Assembly: GCA_026936335.1 (NCBI GenBank) | Contig: JAPMXV010000055.1 | Coordinates: forward strand, 1-64,000 | DNA from: Mantamonas sphyraenae STR306 | Lineage: Eukaryota; Protista; CRuMs | Reading direction: 5' to 3' | DNA length: 64,000 nt | Shown: positions 1-53,100 of the stretch, one piece after another | Layout of the letters: each line of letters starts with the position of its first letter | Position numbering within the stretch: the first letter of the stretch is position 1 | Made by a program: the position numbers and the translations under genes | Notes under the pieces: model-generated | What the model was told of the DNA's origin: nothing | Databases searched by the model: none | Seen by the model: the letters and a program-made list of their open reading frames with translations, nothing else

Positions 1-147
1 CCTAACCCTAACCCTAACCCTAACCCTAACCCTAACCCTAACCCTAACCCTAACCCTAACCCTAACCCTAACCCTAACCCTAACCCTAACCCTAACCCTA
101 ACCCTAACCCTAACCCTACCCTAACCCTAACCCTAACCCTAAACCCT
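1..147. repeat. Telomeric repeat array (CCCTAA)n, i.e. TTAGGG type, marking a chromosome end
   Basis: About 24 tandem CCCTAA units from base 1, with two variant units near 115-147. Confidence 0.99.
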
Positions 148-777
148 AGGTTGACAAATATCCCTGGTAAAATATGTGAGTCCGGTCTAGGTCATGTGAG
201 TTGTGCTTGTGTCTGCTGGCGGGTGGCTGAGTTGGGTGGTGACATGGGGCAGTGGGCAATGGGTGGGAGTGGAAATGTCGCTGGTGAGTGGTCGCCGTCA
301 TGCAACGCCGCGCAGTCAGCGCTGCCCTTCCGCCTTCAACCAAAATATCACCAACACCCACAACACACTCCACCAGTCCAACACAATCCACATACATTCC
401 AGTTCCACCACCACCACCATGGACAAAGACCACTCAAGCACTCCGAAGCAACAACACACACCCAACACCTACCCAGCGTGCGTTCTGCCTTCCACTCCGT
501 TTTCTGACTGCCCGCTTCTCCCGCTTCCACACCCCCTCCATGCTTCCGTCCCTTCCCTGCACTCCTCCCAAGCATCTCCACTTCCCCATCACCACCGCCG
601 CTGCCTTCTCCGCTCTTCACCGATCCCCTCCCCCCTGTCACTGCCCTCCCCGTTGCCAATTTCCCAGGCTGCCAATCTCCTCCGTTTTTCCCTCTTTGCT
701 CGTTCCAGCCTCCCTTCACCCCCGCTTCTGCCTTGACGGCGTCCATTCCGCCTTCCACTCACCGTTCCCACCCCGCC

Positions 778-3700
778 ATGCCCCTCCCCTCTTCCCGCAG
801 CTACACGTACATGGTCCCTCCCATGGCTGCCCAGCCGTTTCCGAACATGCTGCCCGCCTCTGGCGTACAAAACCCGTACCAGCACCCACAACCACCCATC
901 ATCTGGGTTCCTGTCAACATCCATCCCCAGCAGCACTACGCGTATGCTCATCAGGGCCACCCATACTACGCCTTCCCTCCTCCGCCGCCTCCTCAGCCGC
1001 GACAAACGGCCCAGATGCACTTCCCTCAGCCTCCGTTGCACCCTCCGCCTGCTCAACCCACCACTAACCACAACCGCGTCCCCAAACGCATCAGCCCTGC
1101 CTTTGTCGGCATCACACGGACCACATCCACCACCACATCGTCGTCCTCCCCCCACCAGGCCACACAGCAGAGTGGAGACTGCGACGACAACGACGCAGAC
1201 CAGGACACACGCACACATGACACCGGCGACGTGGAGGACCTGATGTTCCTGAACTTTGGCCACCGTGAACCTCGGTCAGTCTCCAGCAACTCAGAGTGGA
1301 TGCCCAGCTCATGGATGGAGGCGTACGAAGATGGCGAGGCAAACGACGCAACCCAGAAGCACGTGGACGACAAGTTGGAACCTCAGGGCATACTTGGCTT
1401 CGCAGACACTGGTGATGCCATGGATGAGGAGTACATGCCGCAAGACGACAGCCACGACGACACAGACGACATGGAGCAGGAGGACACGGACGAATGGCAG
1501 CCGAGACGTACAAGTAGAGGGCTCACGCGGCGTCGCAGAAGCCACATCAGCCGTCGTACCGATCCACAACTGATGAAAGGCTGTGGACAGCGCAGGGTCA
1601 GGGTCACGGCTGGCAGTGGCACGGAAACAGGAACGTCGAGCACACGGGCAAGGAGGGCAAACAACGGTGATACCGGCGCACGGAAGAATGCAGGCGTGAA
1701 CAAGACGAACAAGTTGCCAGATGGTGTTGTGCGCAAAGGGTGGACAACGAACTGGCGCAGTGACGAGCGCAGCTACAGCAGCAAGGAGCACACGGCACTG
1801 CTGAAGCACATGCACACCCTGGTCAACGAGCATCCCATCGACAACATCCCCGACCTCATGACACTGCAGGCGCGTATTGTCGTCTGCCATGGCACCCTGA
1901 CCACGCTTGTCCGACAGATTCAGCTCGCTCTGGGCAACATTCCCCTTTCCCAGGGCGACATGGCCTTCTGCCTCACTCTTCTCGGCCGTGACGTGGATCA
2001 AAGCGCGTGCAGCCATGCCATCCTTCACGCTGGTCTGGCCATGGGTGTGACAAAGGCTGGGTTGAAGGTGTGCTGGCTGGAGAAGCCACACGACCGCGGT
2101 GACCCCAACTACGCCCTCATCCACCTGCTCATGACAGAGATGGACACTCTCGGCGACAGACGCCACCCCACCACCTGGAAGGAGCACAAGCAGACCCATC
2201 TGTGGCTGCAGAAAGCACGACGCCCTGCTGGCAACAACAGCGATCCACACTGGACCAAATGCGACTACGACCACCACCTCACCTCAACCAAGGTGGGTAA
2301 GTGGCATCCTGAGTCAGTGCGCAGTGGCTGGAGCAAAGCCAACAGCGACGAGCGTGGCAGCTGCACGGCGCGGGAGTTCCAGACGCTGCTGGCACACATG
2401 AAGGCACGCGCAGCCGAGCACCCTCGCCACCAGCACACACGCGAGCACCAGGCACTGCGTGAGCTGATCAACAACGGTGACATGCAGTCCCTTGTGCGAC
2501 ACATCATCCTGGCGCTGGGCAACGTTGGCGTGCCGCCTGTCGACCTGGCCTTCTTTGTCCGCCTGCTCAGGCCACAACTCACCTGCCTGCAGGTTCAAGG
2601 TGCCATCAACCACACCCTCACCCGCGGCGTCACCTCCCTCTCCCTCAAGATCGCCTGGGTCGACAACCCCCAACCCAGCGACGCCACACTGCACACCCTC
2701 CTCCACACCCTCATCGACCGCATCACACCCCACATCACGAACCGTCCAACCACCTTCGACGCCGTCAACTTCCTCCGCGTTCCCGAGCTTGTTCTCCCCG
2801 AGCCAACAGAGGAGGAGATGGTGGCCGAGGATGGACTGCCAGATGGCGTTGTGCGCAGTGGCTGGACGTTCTGGCGCAAGAGCGAGCGCAGCCACAGCAA
2901 CAAGAAGGAGCACACGGCACTGCTCAACCACATGCACACCCTGGCGAACGAGCATCCCATCGATGGCATCTCAGACCTCATGACCCTGCAGGCGCGTGTT
3001 GTGGTCTGCCATGGCACCCTGTTGACGCTGGTCCGACAGATTCAGCTCGCTCTGGGCGACCTTCCCCTCTCCCAGGGCGACATGGGCCTCTGCCTCACCA
3101 TTCTCGGCCATGATGTGGATCAACAGGCATGCAGCCATGCCATCCAAGACGCTGGGCTGGCCCCGGGCGTGACAAAGGCTGGGTTGAAGGTGTGCTGGCT
3201 GGAGGAGCCACACGACCACGGCGACCCCAACTACGCCCTCCTCCACCTGCTCATGACAGAGATGGACACTCTCGGCAACAGGGCCCATCCCACCACCTGG
3301 AAGGAGCACGAGCAGACCCAGCTGTGGCTGCAGAAAGCACGACGCCCTGCTGACGACGACAGCGACCCACACTGGACACAATGCGACTACGACCATCACC
3401 TCACCACAACCAACGTGGAAAAGTGGCATCCGGAGTCTGTGCGCAGTGGCTGGAGCAAGACCGGAGACGAGCGTAGTAGCTGCACGGCGCAGGAGTTCCA
3501 GACGCTGCTTGCACACATGAAGACACGCGCAGCCAAGTACCCTCGCCGTCAGCACACACACGAGCACCAGGCACTGCGTAAGCTGATCAACTACGGTGAC
3601 CTGCCGTCCCTGCTGCGACACATCATCCTGGCGCTGGGCAACGTTGGCGTGCCGCCTGTCGACCTGGCCTTCTTTGTCCGCCTCCTCAGGCCACACGTCA

Positions 3701-3990
3701 CCTGCAGGCAGGTGCAAAATGCCATCAGCGCCACCCTCAGCCGCGGTGTCACCACCCTCTCCCTCAAGATCGCCTGGCTCGACAACCCCAAACCCAGCGA
3801 CGCCACACTGCACACCCTCCTCCACACCCTCATCGACCGCATCACACCCCACATCACCACACGCCCCACCACAGTCGCACTCGTCAACGCCTACCCCATC
3901 CCCTCTTTCACCCTCCCCAAGCGCAAAGCCCCTTCCTCCTCCTCCTCCTCCTCCTCCTCCTCCTCCTCCAAACGCCAACGCCTCGAATGA
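778..3990 (+). CDS. Subtelomeric tandem-repeat protein, copy 1, unknown family: Pro/Gln-rich then acidic N-terminus, two ~360-aa units, C-terminal bipartite NLS-like motif
   Basis: Intact ORF; first ATG 778 (alternative 811). Units start at ~1714 and ~2836 with LPDGVVR[KS]GW. Ends PKRK-poly(S)-KRQRLE. Confidence 0.85.
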   Translation: MPLPSSRSYTYMVPPMAAQPFPNMLPASGVQNPYQHPQPPIIWVPVNIHPQQHYAYAHQGHPYYAFPPPPPPQPRQTAQMHFPQPPLHPPPAQPTTNHNRVPKRISPAFVGITRTTSTTTSSSSPHQATQQSGDCDDNDADQDTRTHDTGDVEDLMFLNFGHREPRSVSSNSEWMPSSWMEAYEDGEANDATQKHVDDKLEPQGILGFADTGDAMDEEYMPQDDSHDDTDDMEQEDTDEWQPRRTSRGLTRRRRSHISRRTDPQLMKGCGQRRVRVTAGSGTETGTSSTRARRANNGDTGARKNAGVNKTNKLPDGVVRKGWTTNWRSDERSYSSKEHTALLKHMHTLVNEHPIDNIPDLMTLQARIVVCHGTLTTLVRQIQLALGNIPLSQGDMAFCLTLLGRDVDQSACSHAILHAGLAMGVTKAGLKVCWLEKPHDRGDPNYALIHLLMTEMDTLGDRRHPTTWKEHKQTHLWLQKARRPAGNNSDPHWTKCDYDHHLTSTKVGKWHPESVRSGWSKANSDERGSCTAREFQTLLAHMKARAAEHPRHQHTREHQALRELINNGDMQSLVRHIILALGNVGVPPVDLAFFVRLLRPQLTCLQVQGAINHTLTRGVTSLSLKIAWVDNPQPSDATLHTLLHTLIDRITPHITNRPTTFDAVNFLRVPELVLPEPTEEEMVAEDGLPDGVVRSGWTFWRKSERSHSNKKEHTALLNHMHTLANEHPIDGISDLMTLQARVVVCHGTLLTLVRQIQLALGDLPLSQGDMGLCLTILGHDVDQQACSHAIQDAGLAPGVTKAGLKVCWLEEPHDHGDPNYALLHLLMTEMDTLGNRAHPTTWKEHEQTQLWLQKARRPADDDSDPHWTQCDYDHHLTTTNVEKWHPESVRSGWSKTGDERSSCTAQEFQTLLAHMKTRAAKYPRRQHTHEHQALRKLINYGDLPSLLRHIILALGNVGVPPVDLAFFVRLLRPHVTCRQVQNAISATLSRGVTTLSLKIAWLDNPKPSDATLHTLLHTLIDRITPHITTRPTTVALVNAYPIPSFTLPKRKAPSSSSSSSSSSSSKRQRLE

Positions 3991-4688
3991 ACCACCCCTT
4001 CATTCTCACACCTTCCCACTCACCCTCCCCTCCCCACCCACCCAATCACCCTCTCCATCACCTCATCCGGCGGTGTTACCCACGCTTCCGACCCTCTCTT
4101 CCACATACGCCTCCATCCCACCACACCCAAACATCGCTTCCCCCTCCTCCCCATTCATCACCAACGCCACCTCCATCGCCTCATCCACCTGTGCACCCCA
4201 CCCATCCGCCTTCAACCAAAAGTATCACCAACACCCACAACTCCATCCACCAGTCCAACACAATCCGCATACACTCCAGCACCACCTCCACCACCATGGA
4301 CAAAGACTACTCAAGCACTCCCAAGCATCAACACACACCCAACACCTACCCAACGTGCGTTCTGCCTTCCATTCCGTTTTCTGACTGCCAGCTTCTGCCG
4401 CTTCCATGCCTCCTCCATGCCTGCGTCGCGTCCCTGCACTTCTCCCCTGCATCTCCACGTCTCCATCATCACCGCCGCTGCCTCCACATCTCCTCTCCGA
4501 TCCCCTCTCCCCTGTCACTGCCCTCTCAGTTGCCAGTTTCACCGTTCCCACTCTTCTTCCTCAGTTTCCCTCTTTGCTCGTTCCAGCCTCCCTTGACCCC
4601 GCTTCTGCTCTGACGGCGTCCATTCTGCCCTCCGCTTACCGTTCTCATCCCGCCTTGCCCCTCCCCGTCTCCCCACAGGTACGCACCC

Positions 4689-7600
4689 ATGGTCCCCTCC
4701 AAACCTGCCCAGCCGTTTCCCAACATGCAGCCCGTCACTGACGTCCAACCTCCGGACCTGCACCCACAACCGCCCATCAACAGCGCCCACGTCAACACCC
4801 AACCCCAGCAGCACCACGCATATGCTCATCAGGGCCAGCCATACTCATCCTACCCTTCTCCGCCGCCTCCTCAGCCGCGACGATCTGCCCGAATGCACAA
4901 CGCTCAGAATCACCATCCGCCTGCTCAACCCACCACAAACCACAACCGCGCCTCCGAACGCATCAGCACTCCCCTTTTTAACACCACACGGACCACATCC
5001 ACCACCACATCGTCGTCCTCCTCTGACCAGGCCACCCGGAAGACTGGAGACAGCGACGACGACGACGACGACGACACGCCGCAAGACGACAGCGACGACG
5101 ACACAGACGACATGGAACAGGAGGACACGGACAAATGGCAGCTGAGAACCCGGCTGAGAAGCCACACACGACGTTCTATCGGACCACACAACACAAAAGG
5201 CAGCGAACAGCACAGGCTCAGGGTCACGGCTGACAGTGGCACAGAGACAGGGACATCGAGCACACGGGCAAGAAGGGCCAAGAACGTTAACACCGGTGCA
5301 CGCAAAGCAGAGCGCGTGAACAAGGAGAACAAGTTGCCAGATGGCGTTGTGCGCAAAGGGTGGGCAATTGGACGTAGTGTCGAACGCAGCCACAGCAACA
5401 AGAAGGAGCACACGGCACTGCTGAACCACATGCACACTCTGGCCAACGAGCATCCCATCGACGACATCCCCGACCTCGTGACCCTGCAGGCGCGTGTTGT
5501 GGTCTGCCATGGCCCCCTGATGACGGTGATTCGACAGATTCAACTCGCTTTGGGCAACATTCCCCTCTCCCAGGGTGACATGGCCCTCTGCCTCACCCTT
5601 CTCGGCCGTGACATGGATCAACAGGCATGCAGCCATGCCATCCAAGACGCTGGGCTGGCCCCGGGCGTGACACAGGCTGGGTTGAAGGTGTGCTGGCTGG
5701 AGGAGCCGCACGACCACGGCGACCCCAACTACGCCCTCCTCCACCTGCTCCTGACAGAGATGGACACTCTCAGCGACAGCCCACATCCCACCAACTGGAA
5801 GGAGCACGAGCAGACCCAGCTATTGCTGCAGGAAGCACGACACCCCACCAACAACGACAGCGACCCCCACTGGACCCAATGCGATTACGACCACCACCTC
5901 CCCGCCACCACGGTGGACCAGTGGCAACCCGAGTCTGTGTGCAGTGGCTGGAGCCCGGGTAGGGGTGACGCCGCAGACGAGCGTGGCAGCTGCACGGCGC
6001 GGGAGTTCCAGACGCTGCTGGCCCACATGCAGGCACGCGCAGCCAAGTACCCTCGCCATCAGTACTCACACGAAGACAATGCACTGCGTGAGCTGATCAA
6101 CAACGGCAGCCTGCAATCCCTGGTGCGCCACATCATCCTGGCGCTGGGCAACGTTGGCGTGCCGCCTGTCGACCTGGCCTTCTTTGTCCGCCTCCTCAGA
6201 CCAAACGCTACCTACGAGCTTGTGAAATCATGCATCCGGACCAGCCTCACCCGAGGCGTCACCTTCCTCTCCCTCAAGATCGCTGGCTCGACAAACCCCA
6301 ACGCAAAGACGCCACACTGCACACCCTCCTCCACACCCTCATCGACCGCATCACACCCCACATCACCACCCGCCCTACCACCTTCAACGGGGTCGACACA
6401 CTCGACATCCCTGAGCTTGTTCTGCCCGAGCCTACAGAGGAGGAAGTGGTGGCCGTGGAGGATGGGCTGCCAAACGGCGTCCTGCGCAGTGGCTGGTCAC
6501 AGTGGCCCGGCAATAAGCGCAGCCACAGCAGCAGGGAAGAGCACACGGCACTGCTGAACCACATGCGCACCCTTGCCAACGACCATCCCATTGACGACAT
6601 CCCCGACCTCATGACTCTGCAGGCGCGTGTTGTGGTCTGCCATGGCACCATGAACACGCTGGTCCGACAGCTCCTGCTCGCTCTGGGCAATATTATCCTC
6701 TCTCAGGGCGACATGGCCCTCTGCCTCACCCTTCTCGGCCGTAACATGGATCAACAGGCGTGCAGCAATGCCACCAACAAGTCTGGTCTTCCCACGGGTG
6801 TGACACAGGCCGGGTTGAAGGTGTGCTGGCTGGGGGAGCAACATGACCACGGCGACCCCAACTACGCCCTCCTCCACCTCCTCATGACAGAAATGGACAC
6901 TCTCGGCAACAGGCCCCATCCCACCAACTGGAAGGAGCACAAGCGGACCCAGCGGTGGCTGCAGAAAGCACGACGCCCTTCCAACAACGACAGCGACCCG
7001 CACTGGACACAATGCGACTACGACCACCACCTCACCACCACCGAGGTGGACCAGTGGCATCCTGAGTCTCTGCGCAGTGGCTGGAGCAAAGCCAACAACG
7101 ACGAGCGAGGCAGCTGCACGGCGCGGGAGTTCCAGACGCTGCTGGCCTACATGAAGGCACACGCAGCCAAGTACCCTCGCCGTCTGTGCTCACACGAACA
7201 CCAGGCACTGCGGGAGCTGATCAACAACGGCGACTTGCGGTCTCTGGTGCGACACATGATCCTGGCGCTGGGCAACGTTGGCGTGCCGCCTGTTGAACTC
7301 ACCTTCTTTGTCCGCCTCCTCAGGCCACAAGCCACCTACCAGCAGGTTGTGACTGCCATCAGCGCCACCCTCAACCGCGGCGTCACCTTCCTCTTCCTCA
7401 AAATCGCCTGGCTCAACATACCCCAACGCGGCGACGCCACACTGCACACCCTCCTCCACATCCTCATCGACCGCATCACACCCTACATCACCAACCGCCC
7501 CACCACCTTCAACGGCGTCGACACACTCGACATTCCTGAGCTTGTGCTGCCCGAGCCAACAGAGAAAGAGATGATGGCCATGGAGGAGCCAGATGGTGTT

Positions 7601-8816
7601 GTGCGCAGGTACAACGGCGCACGGAAGAAAGTCAAGAAAGCAGGCGTGAACAAGAGGAACAAGCTGCCAAAAGGCGTTGTGCGCAAAGGGTGGACAACGT
7701 TGTCCAAATACGAGCGCAGTCACAGCAACAACGAGGAGCACACGGCACTGCTGAATCACATGCACACCTGGCCAACAAGCATCCCATCGACAACATCCCG
7801 ACATCATGAACCTGCAGGCGCGTGTTGCGGTCTGCCATGGTACCGTGCACTCGCTCGTCCGAAAGATTCAGCTCGCTCTGGGCAACATTCCCCTCTCCCA
7901 GGGCGACATGGCCTTCTGCCTCACCCTTCTCGGCCGTACCACTGATCGAAAGGTGTGCAGCCATGCCATCCCCCACGCTGGTCTGGCCACAGGTGTGACA
8001 GATGCCGGATTGAAGGTGTGCTGGTTGGAGGAGCCACACGACCACGGCGACCCCAACTACGCCCTCCTCCACCTCATCATGTCAGAGATGGACACTCTTG
8101 GCGACAGCCCACATCCCACCAACTGGAAGGAGCACGAGCAGACCCAGCTGTTGCTGCAGGAAGCACGACACCCCACCAACAGCGACAGCGACCCCCACTG
8201 GACGCAATGCGACTACGATCACCTCCTGACCACCACCGAGGTGGGCCAGTGGCAACCCGAGTCCGTGCGCAGTGGCTGGAGCACATCCGCAGACGAGCGA
8301 GGCAGCTGCACGCCGCGGGAGTTTCAGACGCTGCTGGCACACATGAAGGCACGCGCAGCCAAGCACCCTCGCCGTCAGCACACACACGAGCACGATGCAC
8401 TGTGTAAGCTGATCAACAAAGGCAGCCTGCTGTCCCTGCTGCGACACATCATCCTGGCGTTGGGCAACGTTCCTGTGCCGCCTATCGACCTGGCCTTCTT
8501 TGTCCGCCTCCTCCGGCCACACCGCACCTACAAGCATGTGCAAGGTGCCATCAACTACACCCTCGCCGAAGGTGTCACCTCCCTCTCCCTCAAGATCGCC
8601 TGGCTCGACAACCCTCATCCCAGCGACGCCACACTGCACACCCTCCTCCACACCCTCATCGACCGCATCACACCCCACATCACCACCCGCCCCACCACCT
8701 CAGCACTCGTCAACGCCTACCCCATCCCCTCCTTCACCCTGCCCAAGCGCAAAGACCCTTCCTCCTCCTCATCCTCCTCATCCTCCTCCTCCTCCAAACG
8801 CCAACGCCTCGAATGA
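4689..8816 (+). CDS. Subtelomeric tandem-repeat protein, copy 2, with three units. Interrupted by three single-C deletions (~6283, ~7768, ~7799): assembly errors or a pseudogene.
   Basis: ORFs 4689-6557, 6230-7945 and 7806-8816 join into one frame when one C is restored at each site by comparison with the paralogous units. Same C-terminus as copy 1. Confidence 0.75.
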
Positions 8817-8879
8817 ACCCTTCACCCTTCATTTGCACCCAATTACCTCCCTTCCTGCCCTCAATGTGTGCCATCCACA

Positions 8880-9938
8880 TCACTCCTCACCCTCCGCAAC
8901 GACCTCAATCTCACACGGAAGCCGGTGCCCAAACTTCACCCCTCCGCCATCCGCCATCCTCCAATACCCACGATACACCCCAACCTTCTCCGGCGCCACC
9001 ATGTCCACACTCACATCCACCTCTTCCCCGGGTTCCACCGTCTCCGCGTCCACCTCTACCTCCTCCTCCGCGCCCATTTGATCTCCGTTCTTCTTGCTCA
9101 CAAACACCACCCGACACCCTCTCTCCCACGCTTCGTCGCTGTCGTTCCGCACCCTCCACGTTTTCACAAACGCCGTGTTCCCCACCACCTGGTTCTCCCC
9201 CTTGGACATCGTCACCTCCCGAACCAGCCGCGCCTTGTTCCTTCCGCTCCCTCCACCTCCCCCCCTACCACCTCCTCCCCTACCACCTCCTCCTCCTCTA
9301 CCACCACCTCCTCTACCTCTGCCTCCCCTCCCTCCCCGTCCCCTTCCTCCCCTCCTCCCACTCCCGCCATCCGCCGCCTCCCCGAGCTTCTCAATCCGCG
9401 ACATCACCACCTTGTCCAACACCTTGCCTGACACACGCCCCACAGGAAGCAGAGCCAGCACCTCTTCCCTCTCCACCTCCTCCAGCTCCTGCACCAAAGC
9501 CTTCGTTTCCGCGCTCAATTCCTCCGGAACCACCACCTCCTCTCTTTCCTCCTCCGCCTCTTCCACCACCTCCTTACCCTTCTTAGAACCCACCTTCACT
9601 TTGCCCTTGCGTTCCATAAACACTCGCAGCGTCGGCATGACCCGTTTCTCCTCCTTCGCCACTTGCCGACTCAGCAGAAGCGCGTGCTCCACCTCCACAT
9701 CGCTTCCCATCACAATCCAGTCCCCCTCCTCGTCCACATATGACATCTTCATCCGCCCCACAATCTCCTCCGACTTCTCAAACGCTTCTGCCACCCCAGC
9801 CACCAGCGTTGCTACCCCGACGCCACTTCCGTCCACCACAAAACGCCGCGTCACTCCTCCCAGTGTCACCTTGACCGACACCCGCCTATCTGAGCCTTCC
9901 TCCTCGTTTCCTTGTCCGCTGCCGTTGCTGCTGCTCAT
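8880..9938 (-). CDS. NBR1-like protein: PB1 domain, RGG-rich linker, NBR1/FW domain
   Basis: PB1 acidic motif MSYVDEEGDWIVMGSDVEV. FW-domain motifs FVKTWRVRNDSDEAW and GVYRGYWRM...FGHRL. No ZZ or UBA domain seen. Confidence 0.8.
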   Translation of the reverse strand: MSSSNGSGQGNEEEGSDRRVSVKVTLGGVTRRFVVDGSGVGVATLVAGVAEAFEKSEEIVGRMKMSYVDEEGDWIVMGSDVEVEHALLLSRQVAKEEKRVMPTLRVFMERKGKVKVGSKKGKEVVEEAEEEREEVVVPEELSAETKALVQELEEVEREEVLALLPVGRVSGKVLDKVVMSRIEKLGEAADGGSGRRGGRGRGGRGGRGRGGGGRGGGGGRGGGGRGGGGGSGRNKARLVREVTMSKGENQVVGNTAFVKTWRVRNDSDEAWERGCRVVFVSKKNGDQMGAEEEVEVDAETVEPGEEVDVSVDMVAPEKVGVYRGYWRMADGGGVKFGHRLPCEIEVVAEGEE

Positions 9939-10007
9939 CCCAGTCCAAGTTTGCTTGCTTCCGCCTGCACAACCCAACAACCACCTCCCCCCCTCCATAC
10001 ACCCACC

Positions 10008-12804
10008 ATGCTCACTCTCCCTTTCCACAAGGAGATCTTTACAGACATCATGGCTGACGACGCCCTCCTCGTCATGGCCAAAGGCCTGGGCCTCCTCAAA
10101 CTTGTCAGCAACCTCCTCAAGGTTTACTGCAACACAGACTCCCTGGTGTTCATTCTCAACCACTCCCACATGGCCAAAGACATCCAGGACCACCTGTTAG
10201 CTCTCGGTGTACCCCCCGCCCTCCTTCCGCGCAGCATCGACAACTCCCTCGACGCAGACGCACGCGAAGCCCTGTACAACCACAAAGGCTGCTTCATGGT
10301 CACCTCTCGCATCCTTGTTGTCGACATGCTCACCAAACGTGTGCCCTTTGCCGATGTCACTGGCATGATCGTCCTTGAAGCCGACCGTGTTGCCGAAAAC
10401 ACAAACGAGAGCTTCGTGCTCTCCCTCCTTCTCGACCAGAACCGCGCCGCATTTATCAAGGGCTTCTCTGAAAACCCAGAAGCCCTCACCCAGGGCTGGT
10501 GCCGCGTCGAAAAGGTCATGGCCAACCTCCACGTCGGCAAGCTCCTCCTCTGGCCCCGCTTCCACTCTTCCGTCACAAACTCCCTCGACCAGCACGAGCC
10601 AGAGGTCATTGGCCTCGACATCACCATGACTCCCCGCATGTCTGTCGTCAACCAGGTCATTGTCGAGCTCATCTCCAGCTGCCTCAAGGAGCTCCGGGCA
10701 AACAAGGACATCAATTCTCGAGAACTCACCCTCGAGGCTGCCTGCCTTCCCTCCTTTGAGCGCGTCCTCCAATCTGCCCTCACCCCTGTCTGGCACCGCA
10801 TCGGCCCCAAAGCCAAGCAGCTTGCAGAAGATATCAAAACCCTCCGCACCCTCCTCCGACACCTCATCAAGTACGACTGCGTCACCTTTCTCCAGTCCGT
10901 CGACCTCCTCCGATCCAGTGACGGTGTCACCACCACAAACTCCTTGTGGCTCCTCATGGATGCTGCCGAGGAGCTCTTTCGCAACGCCCAGGTCCGTGTC
11001 TTCACCCGCGGCCCGCCCGCTTCCCCAACCGCCGCCAAGTCCAAGACAAAGCCCCGCTCCAGCGCCTCTGCCAACAAACGAAAGCAGCCTGATCCCTCCG
11101 CCGAACCCCAAACTCGCCTCAGACTCCAAACGCCAGCGCACCTCCGCCGAACCTGATTCCGACCCACTTCCGGCCACTCAGGTCGTTTATCCCGTCCTCG
11201 AGGAGAATCCCAAGTGGAGTGTCCTCCTCGAGCTCCTTGCCGAGATCCAAGAGCAGCTTGCCGAAGCTCCTGCCGACCTCGAACCCTCCGCCACCATCCT
11301 CGTTGCCGTCGACACCGAGCGCGTTGCCTACACGCTTCGCACCTACCTTGCCTCTGGAGGCCAGGCCATGCTGCGCGACCGCCTCGAGCAATACTTTATT
11401 CAACAGCATCAACGCAGAGCTCGCGCAGCCCAAGGCCGCTCTGCCCACAACCCGTCCGACTTCCGTCCCACCTTTACCTTTGGTTCCACGCCCAAGTGGA
11501 CCAAGGTCACCTCCTCATCCTCCTCCACCACCACCACCACCTCCTCCTCCTCCTCCTCCTCCAAACGAAAAGCCTCTGCCCTCCCGCCCAACCAACTCAC
11601 CATCACCATGAGCTTCCAAGGCTCCAAGCCTTCTCCCTCCACCACTCCATCCTCCGACCCATCCTCGCCGCCTGCCTCCCCTCCCTCCTCTCCATCCGAC
11701 CTGCTCTTCACAGACGACTTCTCCGTGTGGTTTGGCGTCCACACCCAAACACACGTCATCATCACCACCTTTGACAATGCCATTGTCCTCCACACCCTCA
11801 AGCCAAACTTTGTCGTCATGTACTCCCCGGACGTCGGTTTCACCCGCGCAGTCGAGGTGTACAAGGCCGAAAACCCAAACATCCCCCTCCGCTTCTACTA
11901 CCTTGTCTACCCAGACTCTGTCGAGGACCAGGCCTGGAAAAGCTCTCTCAAGCGCGAACAAAAGGCCTTTGAGGAGCTCATCTTTGCCAAGGGCAACCTC
12001 GTCGTCCCCGAGGAGCGCACCCTCCGCACAGAATCTTCCACTGCCTCCTCATCTGCTTCCTCATCCTCAACACGCCAAGGCGGCCTCCTCGACACCTCCA
12101 CCGCGCCCAAGTCTCGTGTCATTGTCGACATCCGCGAGTTCCGCTCCTCGTTGCCGCCCCTCCTCTACCGCCGCAACATGGACATCGTCGCCGTCACGCT
12201 CGAGGTAGGCGACTACATCCTCTCCCCAGAGATGTGTGTCGAGCGCAAGTCCATTCCAGACCTCTTTGGCTCGCTCAACAGTGGCCGCCTCTACTCCCAA
12301 GCCGAATCCATGTCCCGCTCCTACAAACATCCCATCCTCCTCATCGAGTTTGACGAAAACAAGCCCTTTAGCCTCCAGAGCAAGCACGACTTTTACGGCG
12401 AGATCAACCCAAAGGCCATCAGCAGCAAGCTCGCCATGCTTTGCCTCGCCTTCCCCTCCCTCCGCCTCATTTGGTCCCGCTCTCCTCACGAGACCGCACA
12501 GCTGTTTGAGCAGCTCAAGCTGCATCAAGAAGAACCCATCGTCGAGACCGCCATCACAATTGGCAGCGACGAGGCGCGCAACCTCCTCCAAGGTGACGAC
12601 GAGCGCGTGCACAACATGGCCCCCATGGACGCTCTCGGCCAACTTCCGGGTATCCCTCCCGCGGCTGCCTTTACTCTCATGGGCAAGGCAAACACCCTCC
12701 GCCAGCTCGCACACGCCTCCCTCCCACGCAAGAAGCGACTCCTAGGCGACATCGGCGCCCTACAACTCGACGAACTCCTCGACCATTCCTTTTCTTCTCT
12801 GTGA
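10008..12804 (+). CDS. ERCC4: DNA repair endonuclease XPF/ERCC4/Rad1; frameshift at the C-run 11106-11109
   Basis: LVMAKGLG, VTSRILVVDML, FIKGFSENPE, VLEENPKW, nuclease motifs VIVDIREFRS and GDYILSPEMCVERKS. Confidence 0.95.
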
Positions 12805-41188: not shown

Positions 41189-44100
41189 ATGTCCAGCACT
41201 CCCGCGGGCGGCTCCGAGATCCTTGCGTCCCAGTTTGTAGCCTTTGGGTTTGCTTCTCTCGGCTTGGGCCTCCTCATTATCTTCTATCTCTTCTTCTCTG
41301 CCCGCCTCTTTGCCCTCGTGGTCACCTCCCTGGCCAACTGGCTTCTGCCTCGTGACACCTATTTGAAAATATGTACGTCATGCCAAATGGACCCACACCT
41401 CTCCACCCTCCCTACTGCCCACCTGCTCACACTCTGCCCTTCCTCCAGCATCCATCAACGTCGCCCTCCTCGGCGGACGCCTCCTCATTCGCGGCCTCAG
41501 TTACACAACCAAAGATCGCTCCATACGCGCCGTGGACGTCGTCGTCACCTTTCGCTGGTGGCGCCGTCACTGCAGGGGTGCAGGCAAGGTGGCCAACGAA
41601 GGTCCGTTCTCCATCTGCATCCCTCCTTCCCATTGCCTGGCGCTGCTCTGCCACTTTCGCCGCGCGCTCACATTCCCACTCGCCCGTCCCCATCCCCACA
41701 CAGCCGCCCAGCCTCCCTGCCGCCTCGAGATTGAACTCATGGGCTTCGAGTACCTCGTATACAACAACTCTCTGCAGTACGACCACCTGCAAGACATCCT
41801 TGACAACCGCGAAGCCGGCGTGTCTCTCATTCCAGGTACGTCACCTGCCCCCTGCCGCTTCCACGCCTCCACACCCCTCTCGCCTCCACGTTGCTCACCA
41901 TGTGCCCTTCCCCCCCCACACACACAGACATGCTCAATCCAAATGCAGGCCTCGACAACGTGCCCGACAACCACGACGACGAAGGCCTCCCCATGTTCTA
42001 CCGCCTCGTGCCCACCACAAAGTTTGTCATTCGCCAGGGCTGCTTCATGATCGGCAACCCCAAACTCCAGTACATTGCCTCCATCGCCTTTGACAGATGC
42101 GAGGGCCTCCACACACACATGGACGCCGCCTGGAAGTCTGATCTCTACCGTGTCACAACCTCCGCCAGCTTCTTCCGACCTCGTGTCGACGTCATCGAAA
42201 ACTCTGAATACGAGGAACAGCGTGACACACACACACGCACACAGAACGAAGCCGAAGAGTATGTGTACTGCCCGCGAATGCCCCGTCTCCCCATGATCCT
42301 CCCCCGCTCACAACACACCCGCGCCCCTCGTCACCTCTCAGCTTCTTTACAAACGCCCTCGATGACTTCAAGTCCTTTTTCAAGGACATGCGCTTCGCCT
42401 TTGGCGGTCCAGATGACTCGCCTGCACCAGCCAAACCCAAATCGGCGCAGCAACGCCAACGCGCCTTCACCGCCTCGGCAAAGTCCCAATGGGCTGGCCT
42501 TCCAAGGTTCGCCTACTTCAAATCCATGGTCCGCAACTATGAGTATGCCATGGAAGAGGCCCTTCTTTCTGCGGACATCCTCTCCCTCGAGTACGTCTTT
42601 GACCAGCCGGGCGTCAGCCGATCAACCGAGAATGTCCTCAACTACCAGCTCACTGCCCCGCAGCAGTCTCTAAGCGTCACCAGCAACAACACCACTCTCA
42701 AGTACGGCCCTTGGACTGACCGCCAGCGTGCCTTTTTCATGGAATACTTCTATGCACCCGATTACGCCGTTCAGCCCAAGTACGAACCCAAGAAGGGCCT
42801 CCGCCGCGAGTATGTCAACCTCGACGTCCACCTACGCTTCCAGGGCCACACACACATCAACGTTCCCTTTCGCGAGTTTTCCAAGGACGACAAGTACGAG
42901 AGTCTCGATGAGTGCACTGCACAGAGCATCGACATCACCACTGACGAAGACACCACCGTCGAGTGGGACTACCCTTGGGTCTGCCTCTCCGAAGCAGGCA
43001 CAGCCTCTCTTGTCAACCTCACCTTTCGCGAGTGCGACCTCAGCACAAGCCTCACCGACACCAGCCTCCTGCGCGCGCGGGAGTGGCGCTTCCGCCTCTT
43101 TATGCAGTATCCGCGCCAGTGGAACGACCAGACGGACTGGGAGATCCAAACTCAGCTCTACTCCCCGCAGATCTTCCTCTTGTACAACCACATCACCCTC
43201 CTCAAAGACCTCGTCGCCGATTTCACCTTTGGCGACCCCCCCGACCTTCGCCACTTTATTCCCTGTACATACACCTACAACGTCTCCCTCTACGACTACG
43301 AACTCTTCTGCAATGTCAACGAGCAGAACATCATCTTTGATCCAAACACAGACCTCGACCTCAACGCCCACATGTGTTTCCGCGGCCCGGAGATGAGTGT
43401 CCGCCTCTTCACTCCCTACCTCAAATTCCAGGCGCCCAACTCCGAGGTCAAGTACGAGTTCTACATGCAGGACCTGGGCGTGCGTCTCCACCTGCCAAAG
43501 GGCAACTCCATCCGCGACCACTTTCCAGACCTCCACCAGCGCGACTTTGTTTCGGTCGGCATTTTGAAGCTGTCCGGCTCCTACGTCTTTCACTACAAGT
43601 ACAACGAGACCTACCTCGACTCTATGCTCCTCTTTATGGACATGGAGCGTGTCGATGTCACCCTCCACGGCTTCTACGTCCGCTACCTCATGTTTCTCAA
43701 AGACAACTTCTTCGGCTACTGCCGCGACTCGGCGCAGCTCCACGAACGTGTCGCCCAGCTGCGTCAGCAGCAAATCCAGCAACAGCGCACCATCCTACAG
43801 CAAAACCAGCGCTATCAGGCCCAGTTCCAACAGAGTGCAGGCATCAACACACGAGGACGTGCACAGTCCGTACACATTCCCGGCGCCGCAGGTCCAGGTC
43901 CAAGTGCTGGCGCAGGCGCAGGTGTGGGTGCACCTACAAACAGCATCATGGCAGGCGTTGCCGACCTCGCCGAAGATCCACTCACTCAGGACAGCACCTA
44001 CGAGGAAGAACGCACCCCAGAGAACCGCTTTGAGCTTTACGTCTACCTCAACATCCACGACACAACCGTGCACTTCCCTCCCCTCATGTACAGCGACCGT

Positions 44101-47100
44101 GACCCGGCCACCATGTCCTGTGCCGATATCCTTCTCGAGACACGCACCATCAGCGAGTACCAGGATCTGTTTGTCAACGTGTCCCCCCTCCAGCTCAAGA
44201 TTCCCGTCCCGGACGACCTGCGCACAAGTCCCTTTCTGCGCACCTTTGACATCACCAACCGCAGCTTCGTCAATATCGACGGCCTCACCTTCAAGAGCTA
44301 CTCCCTGTATGGCCCCCCGCCTGAGGAGACCACCTACCACACCATCACGCGCATTGCCGTCGGCCAAGTCACTGCGCAGGTGTTGCCCATCCAGCTCATT
44401 CGCATGGGCGACTGGAGTTCTTCCTTTCAGTTCCATCTCGCAAACCGTGAAAACGCCCTTGCCACAGAATTCTCGGCCCAGATCGATCCGGTCATCAGTA
44501 GACTCTTTCTCAACACAGAACGCATCCACGTGGGAATGTGGGGCAACAACTCCGTCAGCGAGATCCATCTTTCCGACGGCATCGTCATGGAGACTGACTC
44601 CTGGATCAGCCGCCTCTACCACACCAAGCTCGTCGTCGCCATTCCCGAGCTTCTTCTCAAGCACATGAGCCCCAACATTATCATCACATCGAAGCCGCAG
44701 CACAACGCCGCCGCCGCCGCCGCTGCACGTCGCAAAAGTCACCACCGGCGCAGTCGCTCGTACACCGGCAACACGTCGCAGCCTGCAATCATTATGGAGG
44801 AGGACGAGACAGACGTGGGTGTGGAAGCCACCACCACCACCGCCTCCTCCTCCTCGTCATCCGCCACGTCCTCCTCTGCCTCTGCATCATCCTCCTCCTC
44901 CGCTGCCGACAGCAAGGTTGGTGCGGGCGTGGGCTCACCTGCAGCTGGATCTACGTCTGGATCTTCCATTGCCCAGGGGGGTGCCAACAAGGTCAACGGC
45001 ACAGACGGACATGGTACAAGCAACGCTGCCACCGGCTCAGGTGCCGCTTCCAAGTCCGCTCCCAAGGACATCCACTTCGACTCGGGCAAGTGGTACGAAG
45101 TGGGCACCGCCACACTCTCGTTCAACGTCTCTGTATACACCAAAAAGGCCAACTGGGAGATGGACGCGTGGCGCCAGCTTGAGTTTCTGCGTAAGGAGGA
45201 CGGTGGACGAGGGCGTCCAACGCGCCGCATGCCCGATCTGTGGGAGGACATGCCTCCCCTGTACGATCCACTCGAAGACTCCTACCTCATGGACCTGTTT
45301 GACTCGGACTACGACCCGGCAGACGAGACCATGGCCGGCGATGAAACGATCACCGAGAGCGAACTCAGTGCTCTCAACTCGTCCGCATGGACAGCAGACA
45401 GCGTGTCCACGTCCTTGCCTGCCACAGGACCTGCTGCAGACTCACAACCGGAGCGCGATCTGTACGGCACCGACCCTGCCGTCTCGACATCCGCCAACGG
45501 TCCCATTATGCACCACGACCACCGCGACCCATACGCGCCACCCAACAACCACCAGATCAACCTGGCTGGGGAGGACAGCGACGGCAGCACAAGCTCCGAC
45601 GATTCCTTCCACGAGTTTGGCCGCCGCCGTCGTCGCCCCTCTGTGACACGCAAGGACAGTGTACTGGGTGGCACTGGACCCGGTGTGGGTTCGCTCAGTC
45701 GTTCCACCCTTCGAGCACACAATGACGACGGTACACAGCAGTCTCCCGCACACAGAGTCGCCGACGTGGGCGACGACGACGACAACCAGTCCACAGGCTC
45801 GTCCACATCCACATTCTACAGCGCAGCAAGCGACTTTGAGATCAGTGGTGAATGGCTGGCCCAGGACGACGGCAATGTCCAAGAAGAGACAAGCACCGAG
45901 GACGACGGCGACGAGCAATGGGTGCTGGCGCCGTCCGGATATTCCGAGGACGCGCGCAGCAACAGCTTGAGCAGCAGCAGCGAGTACATGACCCCACGTG
46001 GTAGCATCAGCTCGGACGCAGACGTGTTCTTCGACGCAGACTCGGACTTGGGCAAGCTGGGCATGGACAGCAGGCAGCAGTCGTCACAGCAACAACCATA
46101 CACATATGGCAAGCAAAGAAGCAATTCGCGCACAGGATCACTGTTGGGGCCTGCCCAAGGCGCAGCCAAGCTCGGCGAGCGCAGACCCAGCACGCGCAAC
46201 ATGATGCGCAGGCAATCTGTGCACGGAGCCGCCACTCTTCAGAAGCAGGGTTCGCGTCACAACCTTGGCAGCATGAGCGGAGGCGCGCCCGCAAAGCTCA
46301 AGCGCATCCCGAGCAACTTTGACGTCCTAAATCCGACGGCCGACCAACCCATCAGCGTAGCTCGTCCAACAACAGAGGACGAGGACTCTGAAGCGATGTA
46401 TGACGAGATGAACATGGTTTCGGGCGACTCCGAGTCCTTTGACTCAAACTCGCCCCTCATCCATGCCTATCGTCACCTGCTGCAGCGGTACAGCTTCCGC
46501 GGCCACGACGAGCGGCCCGACCAGCCGTTCCAGGTGCACGGCAAGAAACCACACGACCAGTTGGCATCTGTGCTCACCATCCCTTCATCATCCAGCTGGA
46601 CCGACTCGCAGACAGGACAGCTGCCAACCCGTGGAGGACCGTATGGAACCCGCTCGTCGCGCCACAGCCTGCACAGTCCGCACGCAGGCCTCGGGCCGCA
46701 TTTCCAGTCACCGAACGGCACTCCGGGCATGTTTGCAGAGCCATACGCAGCCACACACATCGACATGGATGAATACATGGCGCGAGGCTTCGGCTCGTCT
46801 GGAAACCGCGAAGCCGATGCGTCGACCGCCCTGTCCTCCGCCAAGGAAGGAGGTGTGACCACCGTGTATGTTCTGAGCTTCAACCGAGCTGTCGACTTGT
46901 TGGTGACGCCAGAGTTGCTTCCTGGTATGGCCGAGGTCCTTGAGCAGTTCATCCCGGCCGACCTCGACGTCGATGCGGTTCTGGACAAGCTGCACCTACA
47001 GAGCGAGGCAGACCACTTGGCTGAAGTGTACAAGAAGCAGAACAACAGCACACAGTTTGTTCTCTCCGTACCTGCTGTCAACATCACCATGCTCCAGGCC

Positions 47101-50100: not shown

Positions 50101-53100
50101 GTGCACGTCGATGTGCATTTCGGCACGTCGTCTTTGGAGGAGGACGAAGATGAGGAGGAAGCGACGATGGAAGGGGACGAGGTGGATGAGAACGACGAGG
50201 ACGACAACGGCGATGAAAACAAGGACAGCAGGCGACAGGGTAATCTGTTCTCGCAATGGAGCACCGGAGTGGAACGCCCGGAGCAACCGACATCACCAGG
50301 AGCAAAGTCGGATGGTAGCGCAGGTGGAAAAGGCGAGGATGACGGCGAGGCTGCATCAGACACGGCAAACGAGGACAACCTATCGACCACGCGCATGGTG
50401 TTTGACCTGCACAACGTCGAGGTGAACACGGAGCTGCTGCCATCGGTGCGCTTCCGATACGCAATCAATCGGCTTGTCAGCAAGGTGGACATGCTGGACG
50501 TGTCCACTGTGTTGGTGGACGTCGACGTTGTCCAGCACGCCTTTGTGTTTGACGACCCACAAGCAGGTGTGCACAATGACGGTGCTCGCGGTGCAACTGA
50601 AGACCACGATGACAACAGCGCACCGTCGTCGCCGCGTTCCCATCGCTCAGACAGTGGTTCCATGCACTCGGCTCGTGCGGCATCGGAGCACTCCATGGAC
50701 GGTGGATCCTCCTCGCAGCGCATGGAAGAGCGCCGCATCGAGCTTGCGCGGCTGCAGGGATCGTTTGTGCTCGACAGCATCCGCAGGGAGCTGGAAGCGT
50801 CGCTTATGCTCGGTTACATGCAGAATGTGATCAACGCAGAGCTGTTTGACAACCTTCTCACGCTTCAAGCGAAGCTGAAGCACGAGGTGAACGACCTGTT
50901 GGAGGAGGGACTGACGCTCGCTGAATGGGACACGAGCGGAGCGTTCACGCTGAACACATCCACCTCCAGCACCCAACAGCGCGGCGATGGCCACGGCTCG
51001 TCCAGTGGACAGGGTGGTGCCGCAGCAGCGGGTGCAGGTGGCCCAGAGGCCGGCAACGATAGCACGGCGGCTTCCAACACTCGCCCCATGCGACTGTCCA
51101 TGCGATTTGCCATGCAGGGCATCCAATTGTTTGTGCAGAGCCATATGACGCAGATTGTCTTCAACTCGGGTGCAGTGAATGTGCTCGTGTTCTCACGGGC
51201 CAACAAAGAGTCCGAGTACATCTGGAAGGGCGAACTGGGCGGCCTCTCCGTGGACGTGGGCCCCATCCCGGGTTCCAAGCTGGACCAGGACACAAGCAGT
51301 GTTTTGGGCTCGGCTGTGTCGGCGGACGACGAGATGATGAGTCAGGCATCAGGTGGAAGCGGAGGTGGCGGTGGGGGCAAGCAACGGCGCCGCTCCGGGG
51401 GCTACAAGCGCAGCATGCGAGGATCAGGAGGAGAAGGCCAGCTGCCCAGCCCTCGGTATGCTCGCATGGCGCGTGCCGAGCAGTATGCCAGTGAAGGGTC
51501 GACAGGATACCGGAGTAGCGGTGGTGGCGGAAGTCGCCACGGATCGGCAAGGTTTGATGGTGTGTGGCCGGGCAACGGAGCACAGGCATATGGTGTGCGC
51601 CGCGACTTGTACGAAGAGGCGTCTGGATATCGGCTGTCTGTGTCGCCGCAACCGAGCGTAAGCTCGATGGCGAGTGCATTCAGCTATGGTTCGGTGGGCG
51701 TCGGGACGTCGGGATCCAAGGACCCGCTGCGCTCCACGGTGCAGGAGGTGTACCAAGGCCGTACGTCCCTGCTCAAGACCACACTCACGGTGCAGAACTA
51801 CCCGTTTAGCAAGCGTAGCACGCGGGAAATTGCTTTCATGCGAGACGAATTTGACGACATGGACGATGAGGCCATCGAATTGTCGTCCAACGGTATCAAC
51901 CTGTGGTTGGGTATGGACGATACGGACGTGATCATCCGGCCGTCGTTCTCCACCCTGGTCAAAGGCATGATGGCACACTTTGAGCAGAACTACGAACGAC
52001 TGCGCGCGAAGCATCAGGCGCTTGACATCGATAGCACCATTGCACGCCACCACCACCACCACCACCACCACCATCACCACCACCATCACAACCGCCATCG
52101 CCGCAGCAGTGACTACGACGGCGGTACACCGCGTGGATCGTCCAGCGTGCACAGCGGATCGGTTCGATCGCACTCGCCGACGGGCTCTATGTACAGCGAG
52201 GAGTCGCTGTCGACGGTGGATTCACCCGAGGGGGGTCCCACTGACACCCCGATGAAGCGAGTGCTGGACAATCTGGACCTGCCTGGCCAGTTCAACGCCC
52301 GGCAGCCCATCATCAAGAATTCGTCAATCAACCTGAAGATGAGTGATACCAGCATCTGGATGCCGTCCAAGGTGAGCGAAGACGGCGAAACGCTGAGCAT
52401 CACCGACACCGCGCTGATGGTGTCTCTGGAGCGCGTGCTGCTGTTTGCTCGGGCAGAGGGGTCCGACGCCACTGCCGATTCGCAGTTGATGAACATGCGC
52501 TCACATGCTGAGCTGTACGACCTCGTGTTCAATGTTTTTGACGGAAGCGACCTGATTGTGGGCCAAGACCAGACGTTCCGGCACAAGCACATGCAGCACG
52601 GCCAGATGAAGGTGGCGCACGCTCAAGCTCAGGTGTACATGCTCAACAAGGCCTCGCAAGGTGAAAAGGGATACCAGTACTTTGTGAGCGCAGACTGCGA
52701 AGGACCACAGCTGGACTTTGCGTCGGATATCATGAGCCAGAGCATGGTGTTCCGTCGCTCGTGGCTTGGAGAGACCAGGGTGGTGAAGCAATCGACCAGC
52801 AGCTCGGGATCTGTGGCCGAAACAGAGACCGCAGGTCCAAGCGGCGGCCACACCGAAACGCAGGAAGATCTGGAGGACCAGGGAAGCATGGAACTGGATG
52901 TGATCATCACAATCAAGTCTGGTCAGTGTCGCTTGCGCCGACTGGGCTACGATTCGACGATGGCGTCGCAGAGCTCGCATGGATCTGGCCGCAGCAACAA
53001 ACAACGTGGTGGCCGCGTCAACACGGGGGGAGGACCGGGCTCGGCATGGCATGCAGCAGGTGCGTCTGAGCACAGGCATGCGAGTGCACACGGGGCTTTC

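What the first reader, a model, noticed from the sequence alone, without database searches (positions are those of the whole stretch)
778..8816. Unrecognised subtelomeric family of modular, probably nuclear, tandem-repeat proteins
Seen: two paralogs start about 630 bp from the telomere and carry 2 and 3 copies of a ~360-aa unit. Each unit is itself an A/B pair of related ~180-aa halves. A: VVR[KS]GW..ERS.S..EHTALL.HM..LVRQIQLALGNIPLSQGDM..CL.LLGR..GVT.AGLKVCWLE.P. B: SVRSGWS..ERGSCTAREFQTLLAHM..LVRHIILALGNVGVPPVDLAFFVRLLRP..GVT.LSLKIAWLDNP. Both proteins end in KRK-(14 aa, Ser-rich)-KRQR and begin with Pro/Gln-rich then acidic tracts. There is no signal peptide or TM segment. Established: this ending fits a bipartite NLS, and subtelomeres commonly host recombination-diversified contingency families, usually surface proteins. 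Inference: this is a nuclear family with variable unit number. I recognise no family match.
Basis: partly seen in the sequence, partly recalled or inferred. Interest (0 to 1): 0.82.

Follow-up and report, generated by a model that had tools for sequence, protein, structure and literature searches.

The report
Orphan gene family capping every chromosome end
Almost every chromosome end of the deep-branching protist Mantamonas sphyraenae starts with one to three copies of the same unannotated gene, which encodes a modular helical protein with no detectable relatives and a few fast-changing surface patches, so it is a real and large new gene family of unknown function.

Summary
Gene 1 (778-3990) is an intact 1070-aa ORF with two 374-aa units. 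Gene 2 (4689-8816) has three units but, as assembled, is broken by three single-base deletions.

The assembly figures match Mantamonas sphyraenae. The family has about 200 genes (203 N-terminus candidates, 405 unit candidates). They sit about 630-655 bp inside the TTAGGG repeats at most contig ends and always read inward. About three quarters have open frames of at least 1000 aa.

The A and B halves are homologous. No relative was found in 1.84 billion protein representatives, Pfam, PDB sequences, or metagenome and viral contigs. The predicted fold is all-helical and matches no solved structure convincingly (best Z 4.3).

The scaffold is under purifying selection (dN/dS about 0.4). Three small patches per half-module evolve faster than synonymous sites (about 1.2-2.9 in cross-validated splits). 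Copies are recombination mosaics.

A nuclear location and DNA recognition remain inference. Expression could not be tested. The scan had already noted this family on other pieces of the same genome, including one follow-up.

The parts
1..148 (.). Telomere repeats (CCCTAA, 24.7 copies); this is the chromosome end
   Evidence: both ends of contigs C1 and C2 show the same repeats
149..324 (+). Telomere-junction spacer, found only next to the telomere and not repeated before gene 2
   Evidence: The self-comparison shows the duplicated block starting at 325. From about base 24-32 onward it is 91-97% identical at other ends.
325..777 (+). Conserved upstream region (presumed promoter and 5' UTR) of gene 1; repeated at 4201-4688 before gene 2
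   Evidence: Jukes-Cantor distance among 19 copies is 0.086, below synonymous divergence
778..3990 (+). Gene 1, intact, 1070 aa. Pro/Gln-rich 778-1152; acidic 1153-1503; basic 1504-1707; module A1 1708-2295; B1 2296-2829; A2 2830-3417; B2 3418-3918; basic/Ser tail and stop 3919-3990
   Evidence: homology among copies stops just after the stop codon
3991..4200 (.). Spacer between the two tandem copies, not shared with other ends
4201..4688 (+). Second copy of the upstream region (83.7% identical to 325-1195 together with the start of gene 2)
4689..8816 (+). Gene 2, three units in the order A1 B1, A2 B1-like, A1-like B2. As assembled it is broken by 1-nt deletions at about 6282, 7766 and 7797
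7586..7700 (+). Chimeric junction in gene 2. The start of an A2-type module is followed by the last residues of the N-terminal basic region and an A1-type module start, the footprint of an unequal crossover that added a unit
   Evidence: translations; 1684-2755 of gene 1 aligns to 7634-8700

Best explanation
This is the telomere-proximal element of Mantamonas sphyraenae chromosomes. It is a block of about 3.8 kb: junction spacer, conserved upstream region, and one single-exon gene. It is present in 1-3 tandem copies at most ends and always transcribed away from the telomere.

Shown:
- The genes are real protein-coding genes under purifying selection.
- They form a lineage-restricted family of about 200 members.
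- They exchange segments between chromosome ends and gain units by unequal crossover.
- They concentrate amino-acid change in three small patches per half-module: the loop after the invariant GW, the start of the helix at residues 61-72, and the whole exposed face of the helix at residues 95-107. The same three places vary in A and B halves.

Inferred:
- The protein works inside the nucleus as a modular recognition protein.
- A Pro/Gln-rich plus acidic N-terminus would act as an effector or activation-like region.
- A basic stretch and the conserved C-terminal basic clusters would drive nuclear import.
- Four helical modules would present variable surfaces that read a diverse target, most plausibly DNA or chromatin such as repeats or transposons.
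- Subtelomeric recombination would supply new combinations of modules.
For: Location and number:
- 128 scored N-termini (203 candidates) and 110 scored units (405 candidates) lie almost entirely 0.77-10 kb from contig starts on + or mirrored at contig ends on -.
- The telomere-to-ATG spacing is about 630-655 bp at the three ends where both coordinates were read: this window's end and the right ends of C1 and C2.
- The upstream 600 bp is 91-97% identical at the 40 scored places of 166 candidates.

Coding:
- 99 of the 128 scored copies have open frames of at least 1000 aa.
- dN/dS is 0.37-0.47 on the scaffold, 0.36-0.71 in the N-terminal parts and 0.21 in the tail.

Variable patches:
- The entropy maps of A and B coincide.
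- Sliding pN/pS is at least 1 only at the patches.
- Columns chosen on half of the genes give dN/dS 1.24-2.95 on the other half, against 0.34-0.45 elsewhere.
- On helix 95-107 the conserved positions follow i, i+4, i+7, i+8, i+11. The variable positions fill the other face with Q, H, K, R, N and S.

Recombination:
- Gene 1 is 98-99.8% identical to the C9 copy upstream and in the N-terminus. Its A1/B1 are closest to the C15 copy (94-95%), and A2 and B2 to yet other copies.
- Gene 2 carries a chimeric unit junction.

Architecture. The tail is conserved in 19 of 19 copies.
Against: - Expression is untested; no RNA run was listed.
- No NLS predictor was run and there is no localisation data. The linker between the basic clusters varies from 9 to 22 residues.
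- The modules are not uniformly basic (pI 5.7-10.2).
- No fold match supports DNA binding. Foldseek found nothing at E <= 0.001. The best VIA Z is 4.3, well below the tool's stated background for helical models, although many top rows are winged-helix regulators aligned to residues 55-126.
- The paralogs recombine, so the train and test gene sets used for dN/dS are not independent.
- The module models are only moderately confident (pLDDT 60 for the unit, 74 for the B half).
Confidence: 0.45

Rival explanations
1. A selfish subtelomeric element, comparable in position to yeast Y' or fungal telomere-linked helicase elements. It spreads among ends by break-induced replication or ectopic recombination. 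Its ORF serves the element, or an arms race with host silencing, rather than a host function.
For: The conserved block includes non-coding DNA and ends just after the stop codon. It is present at nearly all ends in one fixed orientation. Copies are mosaics. About a quarter of the scored copies have shortened frames.
Against: There is no helicase, reverse transcriptase, transposase or nuclease domain. There are no terminal inverted repeats. Purifying selection covers the whole protein. Copy spread by recombination is equally expected for ordinary subtelomeric host genes.
Confidence: 0.2
2. A non-nuclear recognition family, for example self/non-self or mating recognition, or defence against viruses or prey factors. 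The variable patches would bind proteins rather than DNA.
For: Diversifying patches sit on a conserved scaffold. Copy number is high and copies recombine. The modules are near neutral in charge. No DNA-binding fold is confirmed.
Against: No signal peptide or credible membrane segment was seen. Basic clusters are conserved at the C-terminus and ahead of the modules. The N-terminus is acidic and Pro/Gln-rich, as in activation regions.
Confidence: 0.17
3. A structural telomere or subtelomere chromatin protein that helps cap, cluster or segregate the roughly 66 small chromosomes, encoded next to its site of action.
For: The gene sits a fixed 630-655 bp from the telomere at the three ends where both coordinates were read. 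The upstream DNA is more conserved than synonymous sites (0.086 against 0.15-0.19).
Against: A capping role predicts conserved binding surfaces, not hypervariable ones. There is no Myb/SANT or OB-fold match.
Confidence: 0.1
4. Decaying repeats or an assembly artefact with no functional protein.
For: Gene 2 is frame-broken. 29 of the 128 scored copies have open frames under 1000 aa. The region is repetitive in a long-read assembly polished with short reads (PMC10492846).
Against: Most copies keep frames of 1000 aa or more. dN/dS is well below 1 over the scaffold, N-terminus and tail.
Confidence: 0.03

Closest known systems
Candida albicans TLO (telomere-associated ORF) family, Med2 subunits of Mediator (PMC4214616, PMC5908203)
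   Same: It is a subtelomeric gene family, expanded within one lineage, whose products act in the nucleus in transcription rather than at the cell surface (both papers). That the TLO gene is the most telomere-proximal gene and reads toward the centromere is from my own knowledge, not checked in these papers.
   Different: TLO has 10-15 copies with a recognisable Med2 domain. Here there are about 200 copies, no Med2 or any other Pfam domain, internal modules of 374 aa, and hypervariable patches.
Yeast Y' elements and fungal telomere-linked RecQ helicase (TLH) genes (own knowledge, not checked in papers here)
   Same: A conserved multi-kb block that includes an ORF sits directly next to the telomere repeats at many ends, sometimes in tandem, and is homogenised by recombination.
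   Different: Those ORFs are helicases. This ORF has no helicase or other enzyme signature.
Modular DNA-recognition families with hypervariable contact residues: KRAB zinc-finger proteins and TAL effectors (own knowledge)
   Same: Tandem modules have an invariant scaffold, with variation confined to a few positions on one face of a helix. The family is large and fast-evolving. It carries NLS-like clusters and an acidic region.
   Different: There is no sequence or fold relationship. The modules are about 180 aa, with only four to six per protein, and DNA binding is not shown.
Subtelomeric contingency families of parasites and fungi (var, VSG, MSG, EPA; own knowledge)
   Same: They sit at chromosome ends, diversify by ectopic recombination, and show local positive selection.
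   Different: Those encode secreted or surface proteins of pathogens. This is a free-living flagellate, and the protein has no signal peptide or anchor.

Membership tests
Generic subtelomeric recombination-diversified multigene family | Paralogs concentrated at chromosome ends | tested here: met
   essentially all scored copies lie within about 10 kb of contig ends; the one clear internal cluster is on C29
Generic subtelomeric recombination-diversified multigene family | Mosaic copies produced by ectopic recombination or gene conversion | tested here: met
   (the nearest paralog changes from segment to segment); chimeric junction at 7586-7700
Generic subtelomeric recombination-diversified multigene family | Secreted or surface-exposed product | tested here: not met
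   no hydrophobic N-terminus and no credible membrane segment (hydropathy scan only)
TLO / Med2 | Med2 domain | tested here: not met
   Pfam scans of the whole protein and of 80 half-modules found no family at or near its cut-off
Y' / TLH subtelomeric helicase elements | Superfamily 2 / RecQ helicase domains in the ORF | tested here: not met
Helix-turn-helix / winged-helix DNA-binding domains | Significant sequence or structure match to an HTH or winged-helix domain | tested here: inconclusive
   No Pfam or PDB sequence hit. Foldseek found none. The VIA list is dominated by winged-helix regulators over residues 55-126, but Z is only 3-4.3, below the tool's stated background for helical models.
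Classical bipartite NLS | Two basic clusters separated by about 10-12 residues | tested here: inconclusive
   The KRK and KRQR clusters are invariant in 19 of 19 copies, but the Ser linker is 9-22 residues; no import assay or predictor was available
Transposable element ORF | Transposase, reverse transcriptase or integrase domain, and terminal repeats | tested here: not met
   no such domain; no inverted repeats of 16 nt or more in 149-4700

The most novel reading that the evidence does not exclude
The four to six helical modules are a new kind of sequence-reading domain. The three hypervariable patches, above all the exposed face of helix 95-107, would set DNA or chromatin target specificity. 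Chromosome ends would then act as a recombination workshop that produces about 200 different nuclear recognition proteins, analogous to KRAB zinc-finger or TAL-effector repertoires but built on an unrelated fold in a lineage near the base of Amorphea.
Probability: 0.17. Interest if true: 0.9.

Novelty: new variant of a known kind. Interest (0 to 1): 0.62.

Why it matters
Roughly 3% of this 25-Mb genome (about 200 genes of about 3.7 kb) is one gene family. The genome paper does not mention it, and it is absent from 1.84 billion public protein representatives. That paper masked repeats before calling genes, which may explain the absence (PMC10492846); I did not verify this.

Subtelomeric families are known, but a family of this size with a transcription-factor-like layout, an unmatched fold and focal diversifying selection is unusual in a free-living, deep-branching protist. 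It offers a way to study how about 130 chromosome ends are organised and how subtelomeric recombination builds protein diversity outside parasites. If the modules bind DNA, it would be a new recognition scaffold.

Tried and rejected
Searches that found nothing:
- Pfam on the whole protein, on single halves and on 80 half-modules.
- A HMMER profile of 51 units against 1.84 billion representatives: 0 hits at E <= 0.001.
- PDB sequence profile: only a chance hit at E 0.87.
- Metagenome and viral contig scans.
- Rfam on 1-12000.
- Inverted repeats in 149-4700.

Weak leads I do not take as evidence:
- ESM Atlas by features gave no usable hit for the unit. For a B half it gave EF-hand leads at about 0.9 or below, with few shared features and a recognition value below the tool's guide level. 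The loop also lacks the acidic residues typical of EF-hand calcium-binding loops (my own knowledge).
- Atlas by shape gave TM <= 0.37.
- Foldseek against PDB gave nothing at E <= 0.001 for either model.
- VIA wide gave best Z 3.5 (unit) and 4.3 (B half).

Steps that could not be run:
- The RNA evidence search listed no run.
The census therefore rests on the search tables, and the C29 cluster was not read.
- The search for homologous proteins was not run. By the tools' own descriptions the exhaustive HMMER search reads representatives of about the same 15 billion proteins, and the operators flagged its cost.

Full report
**What is in the window**

The window begins with 24.7 CCCTAA repeats at 1-148. 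At 778, which is 630 bp further in, an uninterrupted ORF of 1070 codons starts and ends at 3990.

A self-comparison shows that 325-4004 is repeated at 4201-8833 at 84-87% identity. Within each copy, blocks of about 1.1 kb repeat two or three times.

Gene 1 has this layout:
- a Pro/Gln-rich stretch (aa 1-125);
- an acidic stretch (aa 126-242, pI 4.1);
- a basic stretch (aa 243-310, pI 12);
- four modules, A1, B1, A2 and B2, of 196, 178, 196 and 167 aa;
- a tail of KRK, two residues, twelve Ser, then KRQRLE.

The A and B profiles align with hhalign probability 99.1%, E 1.4e-18 and 38% identity over 128 columns.

**Correction to the observation**

Gene 2 (4689-8816) carries three units but is split over three frames. 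Aligned to gene 1, it lacks one base at about 6282/6283, one at 7766/7767 and one at 7797/7798. Two of these lie in short C runs.

The assembly is PacBio polished with Racon and Pilon (PMC10492846), so residual errors in a repeat cannot be excluded. As assembled, however, the gene is broken. Its first ATG corresponds to Met12 of gene 1, because the upstream ATG is TTG.

Between its second and third units there is a chimeric junction at about 7586-7700. The start of an A2-type module is followed by the last residues of the N-terminal basic region and an A1-type module start. An unequal crossover that added a unit would leave exactly this.

**Whose genome**

The assembly figures given by the tools are 25,061,354 bases in 78 contigs. 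They match the published FALCON assembly: 25.06 Mb, 78 contigs, 59.19% GC, TTAGGG at both ends of 59 contigs and at one end of 14 more, mostly mono-exonic genes (PMC10492846).

That paper masked repeats before gene prediction and does not use the word subtelomere. One other paper in the library holds both 'Mantamonas' and 'subtelomer', once each; I did not read it.

**Census**

- The unit as query gave 405 candidates, of which 110 were scored at 80-90% identity.
- The N-terminal 310 aa gave 203 candidates, of which 128 were scored at 79-100% identity.
- The upstream 629 bp gave 166 candidates, of which 40 were scored at 91-97% identity.

On the + strand the N-terminus starts 530-1240 bases (mostly 770-990) from contig starts. 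Second and third copies start at about 3.6-6.2 kb and about 8.5 kb. On the - strand the copies mirror this at high coordinates.

For C1 and C2, where the right-hand telomere coordinates were listed, the ATG lies 655 and 631 bp from the repeats. By my count from these tables, at least 61 of 78 contig starts and about 60 contig ends carry a copy. These are lower bounds, because only part of the candidates was scored.

Orientation is always away from the telomere. The one clear exception in position is C29:75-103 kb. There, + copies are followed by - copies, and open frames reach 1902, 2172 and 3224 aa.

99 of the 128 scored N-termini lie in open frames of at least 1000 aa. Frame lengths cluster near two-unit sizes, with some at three-unit sizes (1427-1720 aa).

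**Extent of the element**

In an alignment of 19 copies, nucleotide identity is about 0.91-0.93 from the junction spacer through the coding scaffold. It dips to 0.82-0.87 at seven short stretches and falls to background within about 100 bp after the stop codon. No inverted repeats flank the element, and Rfam finds nothing in it.

**Selection**

- Pairwise Nei-Gojobori estimates give dN/dS 0.37 (A) and 0.47 (B) for scaffold columns.
- The N-terminal parts give 0.36, 0.50 and 0.71, and the tail gives 0.21.
- Upstream non-coding divergence (0.086) is about half the synonymous divergence (0.15-0.19).

Amino-acid entropy is concentrated in the same three places in A and B:
- the loop after the invariant GW;
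- one or two residues at the start of the helix at 61-72;
- the helix at 95-107.

Sliding windows reach pN/pS of 1 or more at these patches, and also in the linkers between modules.

To limit the bias of choosing columns by their variability, I defined the variable columns on half of the genes and measured them on the other half, ten times. This gave dN/dS of 1.50-2.95 for A and 1.24-2.51 for B, against 0.34-0.45 for the remaining core columns. The two sets still share ancestry through recombination, so this is good evidence but not conclusive.

In helix 95-107 the conserved residues follow the buried-face spacing i, i+4, i+7, i+8, i+11. The variable positions fill the opposite face, mostly with Q, H, K, R, N and S.

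**Recombination**

- Gene 1 is 97.8% identical to the C9 left-end copy upstream and 99.8% in the N-terminus. Its A1 and B1 are only 90-92% identical to that copy.
- A1 and B1 are closest to the C15 copy (94-95%).
- A2 and B2 are closest to two further copies.

In nearly all of the 19 copies the nearest relative changes from segment to segment.

**Relatives and fold**

- Pfam found nothing near any cut-off.
- A profile of 51 units against 1.84 billion representatives gave zero hits at E <= 0.001. The family's own members are therefore also absent from that library.
- PDB sequences gave nothing.
- Metagenome and viral contigs gave nothing.
- AlphaFold2 on the unit gave an all-helical model with pLDDT 60 and pTM 0.61.
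- The B half, folded with A and B halves as its alignment, gave pLDDT 74 and pTM 0.73. It has seven helices of at least 10 residues and a disordered variable N-terminal loop.
- Foldseek found no PDB match at E <= 0.001.
- The exhaustive VIA search peaked at Z 3.5 for the unit and 4.3 for the B half.
- Atlas searches gave only weak leads.

Many top VIA rows are winged-helix regulators aligned to residues 55-126. In that alignment helix 95-107 would be the recognition helix, and the invariant, poorly modelled stretch after it would be the wing. Scores this low are within the tool's stated background for helical proteins, so I treat this as a lead only. An earlier follow-up on another copy likewise found the winged-helix reading unsupported.

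**Interpretation**

Shown: this is a large, lineage-restricted, telomere-adjacent protein-coding family. It has a constrained scaffold and focal fast-evolving patches, and its segments are shuffled between chromosome ends.

Inferred: it is a nuclear modular recognition protein with a transcription-factor-like layout. The activation-like N-terminus, the basic stretch, the variable modules and the conserved basic tail all point that way.

The target class (DNA or chromatin against protein) is open. Expression is untested, because no RNA run was listed.

Rivals are a selfish Y'-like element, a non-nuclear recognition family, a telomere chromatin protein, and dead repeats. The last is disfavoured by the selection data.

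**Comparison with known systems**

The closest analogues by position and by nuclear function are the Candida TLO/Med2 genes (PMC4214616, PMC5908203). By position, the closest are Y' and TLH helicase elements. By logic, the closest are KRAB zinc-finger and TAL-effector repertoires. No defining domain of any of these is present. This makes it a new protein family within a known genomic theme.

The scan had already noted the same family on other pieces of this genome, including one follow-up. This report adds:
- the genome-wide census;
- the profile search with no hits;
- the cross-validated selection test;
- the mosaic analysis;
- the frameshifts in gene 2.

Noticed in passing
G000:C29:75628-103057 (not in the window): This is the only clear internal cluster of the family. 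Copies on + at 75-85 kb face copies on - at 95-103 kb, and open frames reach 1902, 2172 and 3224 aa, which would be about 5-8 units. It could be a captured pair of ends, an inversion or a misjoin.
   Followed up: no
window 1-64000: The + strand is C-rich (GC skew -0.1 to -0.5) for about 50 kb from the telomere, whichever strand carries the long ORFs. The sign flips near 49-50 kb.
   Followed up: partly
window 8880-10193 (-): The first unique gene after the family is NBR1-like: a PB1 domain (E 4.4e-07), an Arg/Gly-rich tract, and the NBR1 Ig-like domain (E 3.6e-28).
   Followed up: partly
window 42388-55488 (+): A single ORF of 4366 aa, not examined.
   Followed up: no
window 149-1707 and G000:C9:241-1771: The left ends of C55 and C9 share 97.8% identical upstream DNA and a 99.8% identical N-terminal coding region, while the modules downstream are only about 90-92% identical. 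This indicates a recent exchange with a breakpoint near the start of module A1.
   Followed up: yes
A halves, e.g. window 2080-2290 (aa 435-504 of gene 1): An invariant His/Cys/Asp-rich linker (motifs PHDHGDP and DPHWTQCDYDHH) is modelled as disordered (pLDDT < 50). It may be a metal-binding site that the model cannot show.
   Followed up: no
family-wide (table): By my count from the table, inner tandem copies look broken more often than telomere-proximal ones: 6 of 14 against 9 of 49 have open frames under 1000 aa. The numbers are small, were counted by hand and were not tested statistically.
   Followed up: partly
C-terminal tails of 19 copies: The Ser run (a TCC repeat) between the two basic clusters varies from 7 to 20 residues among copies. 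It is a microsatellite inside a constrained tail.
   Followed up: partly
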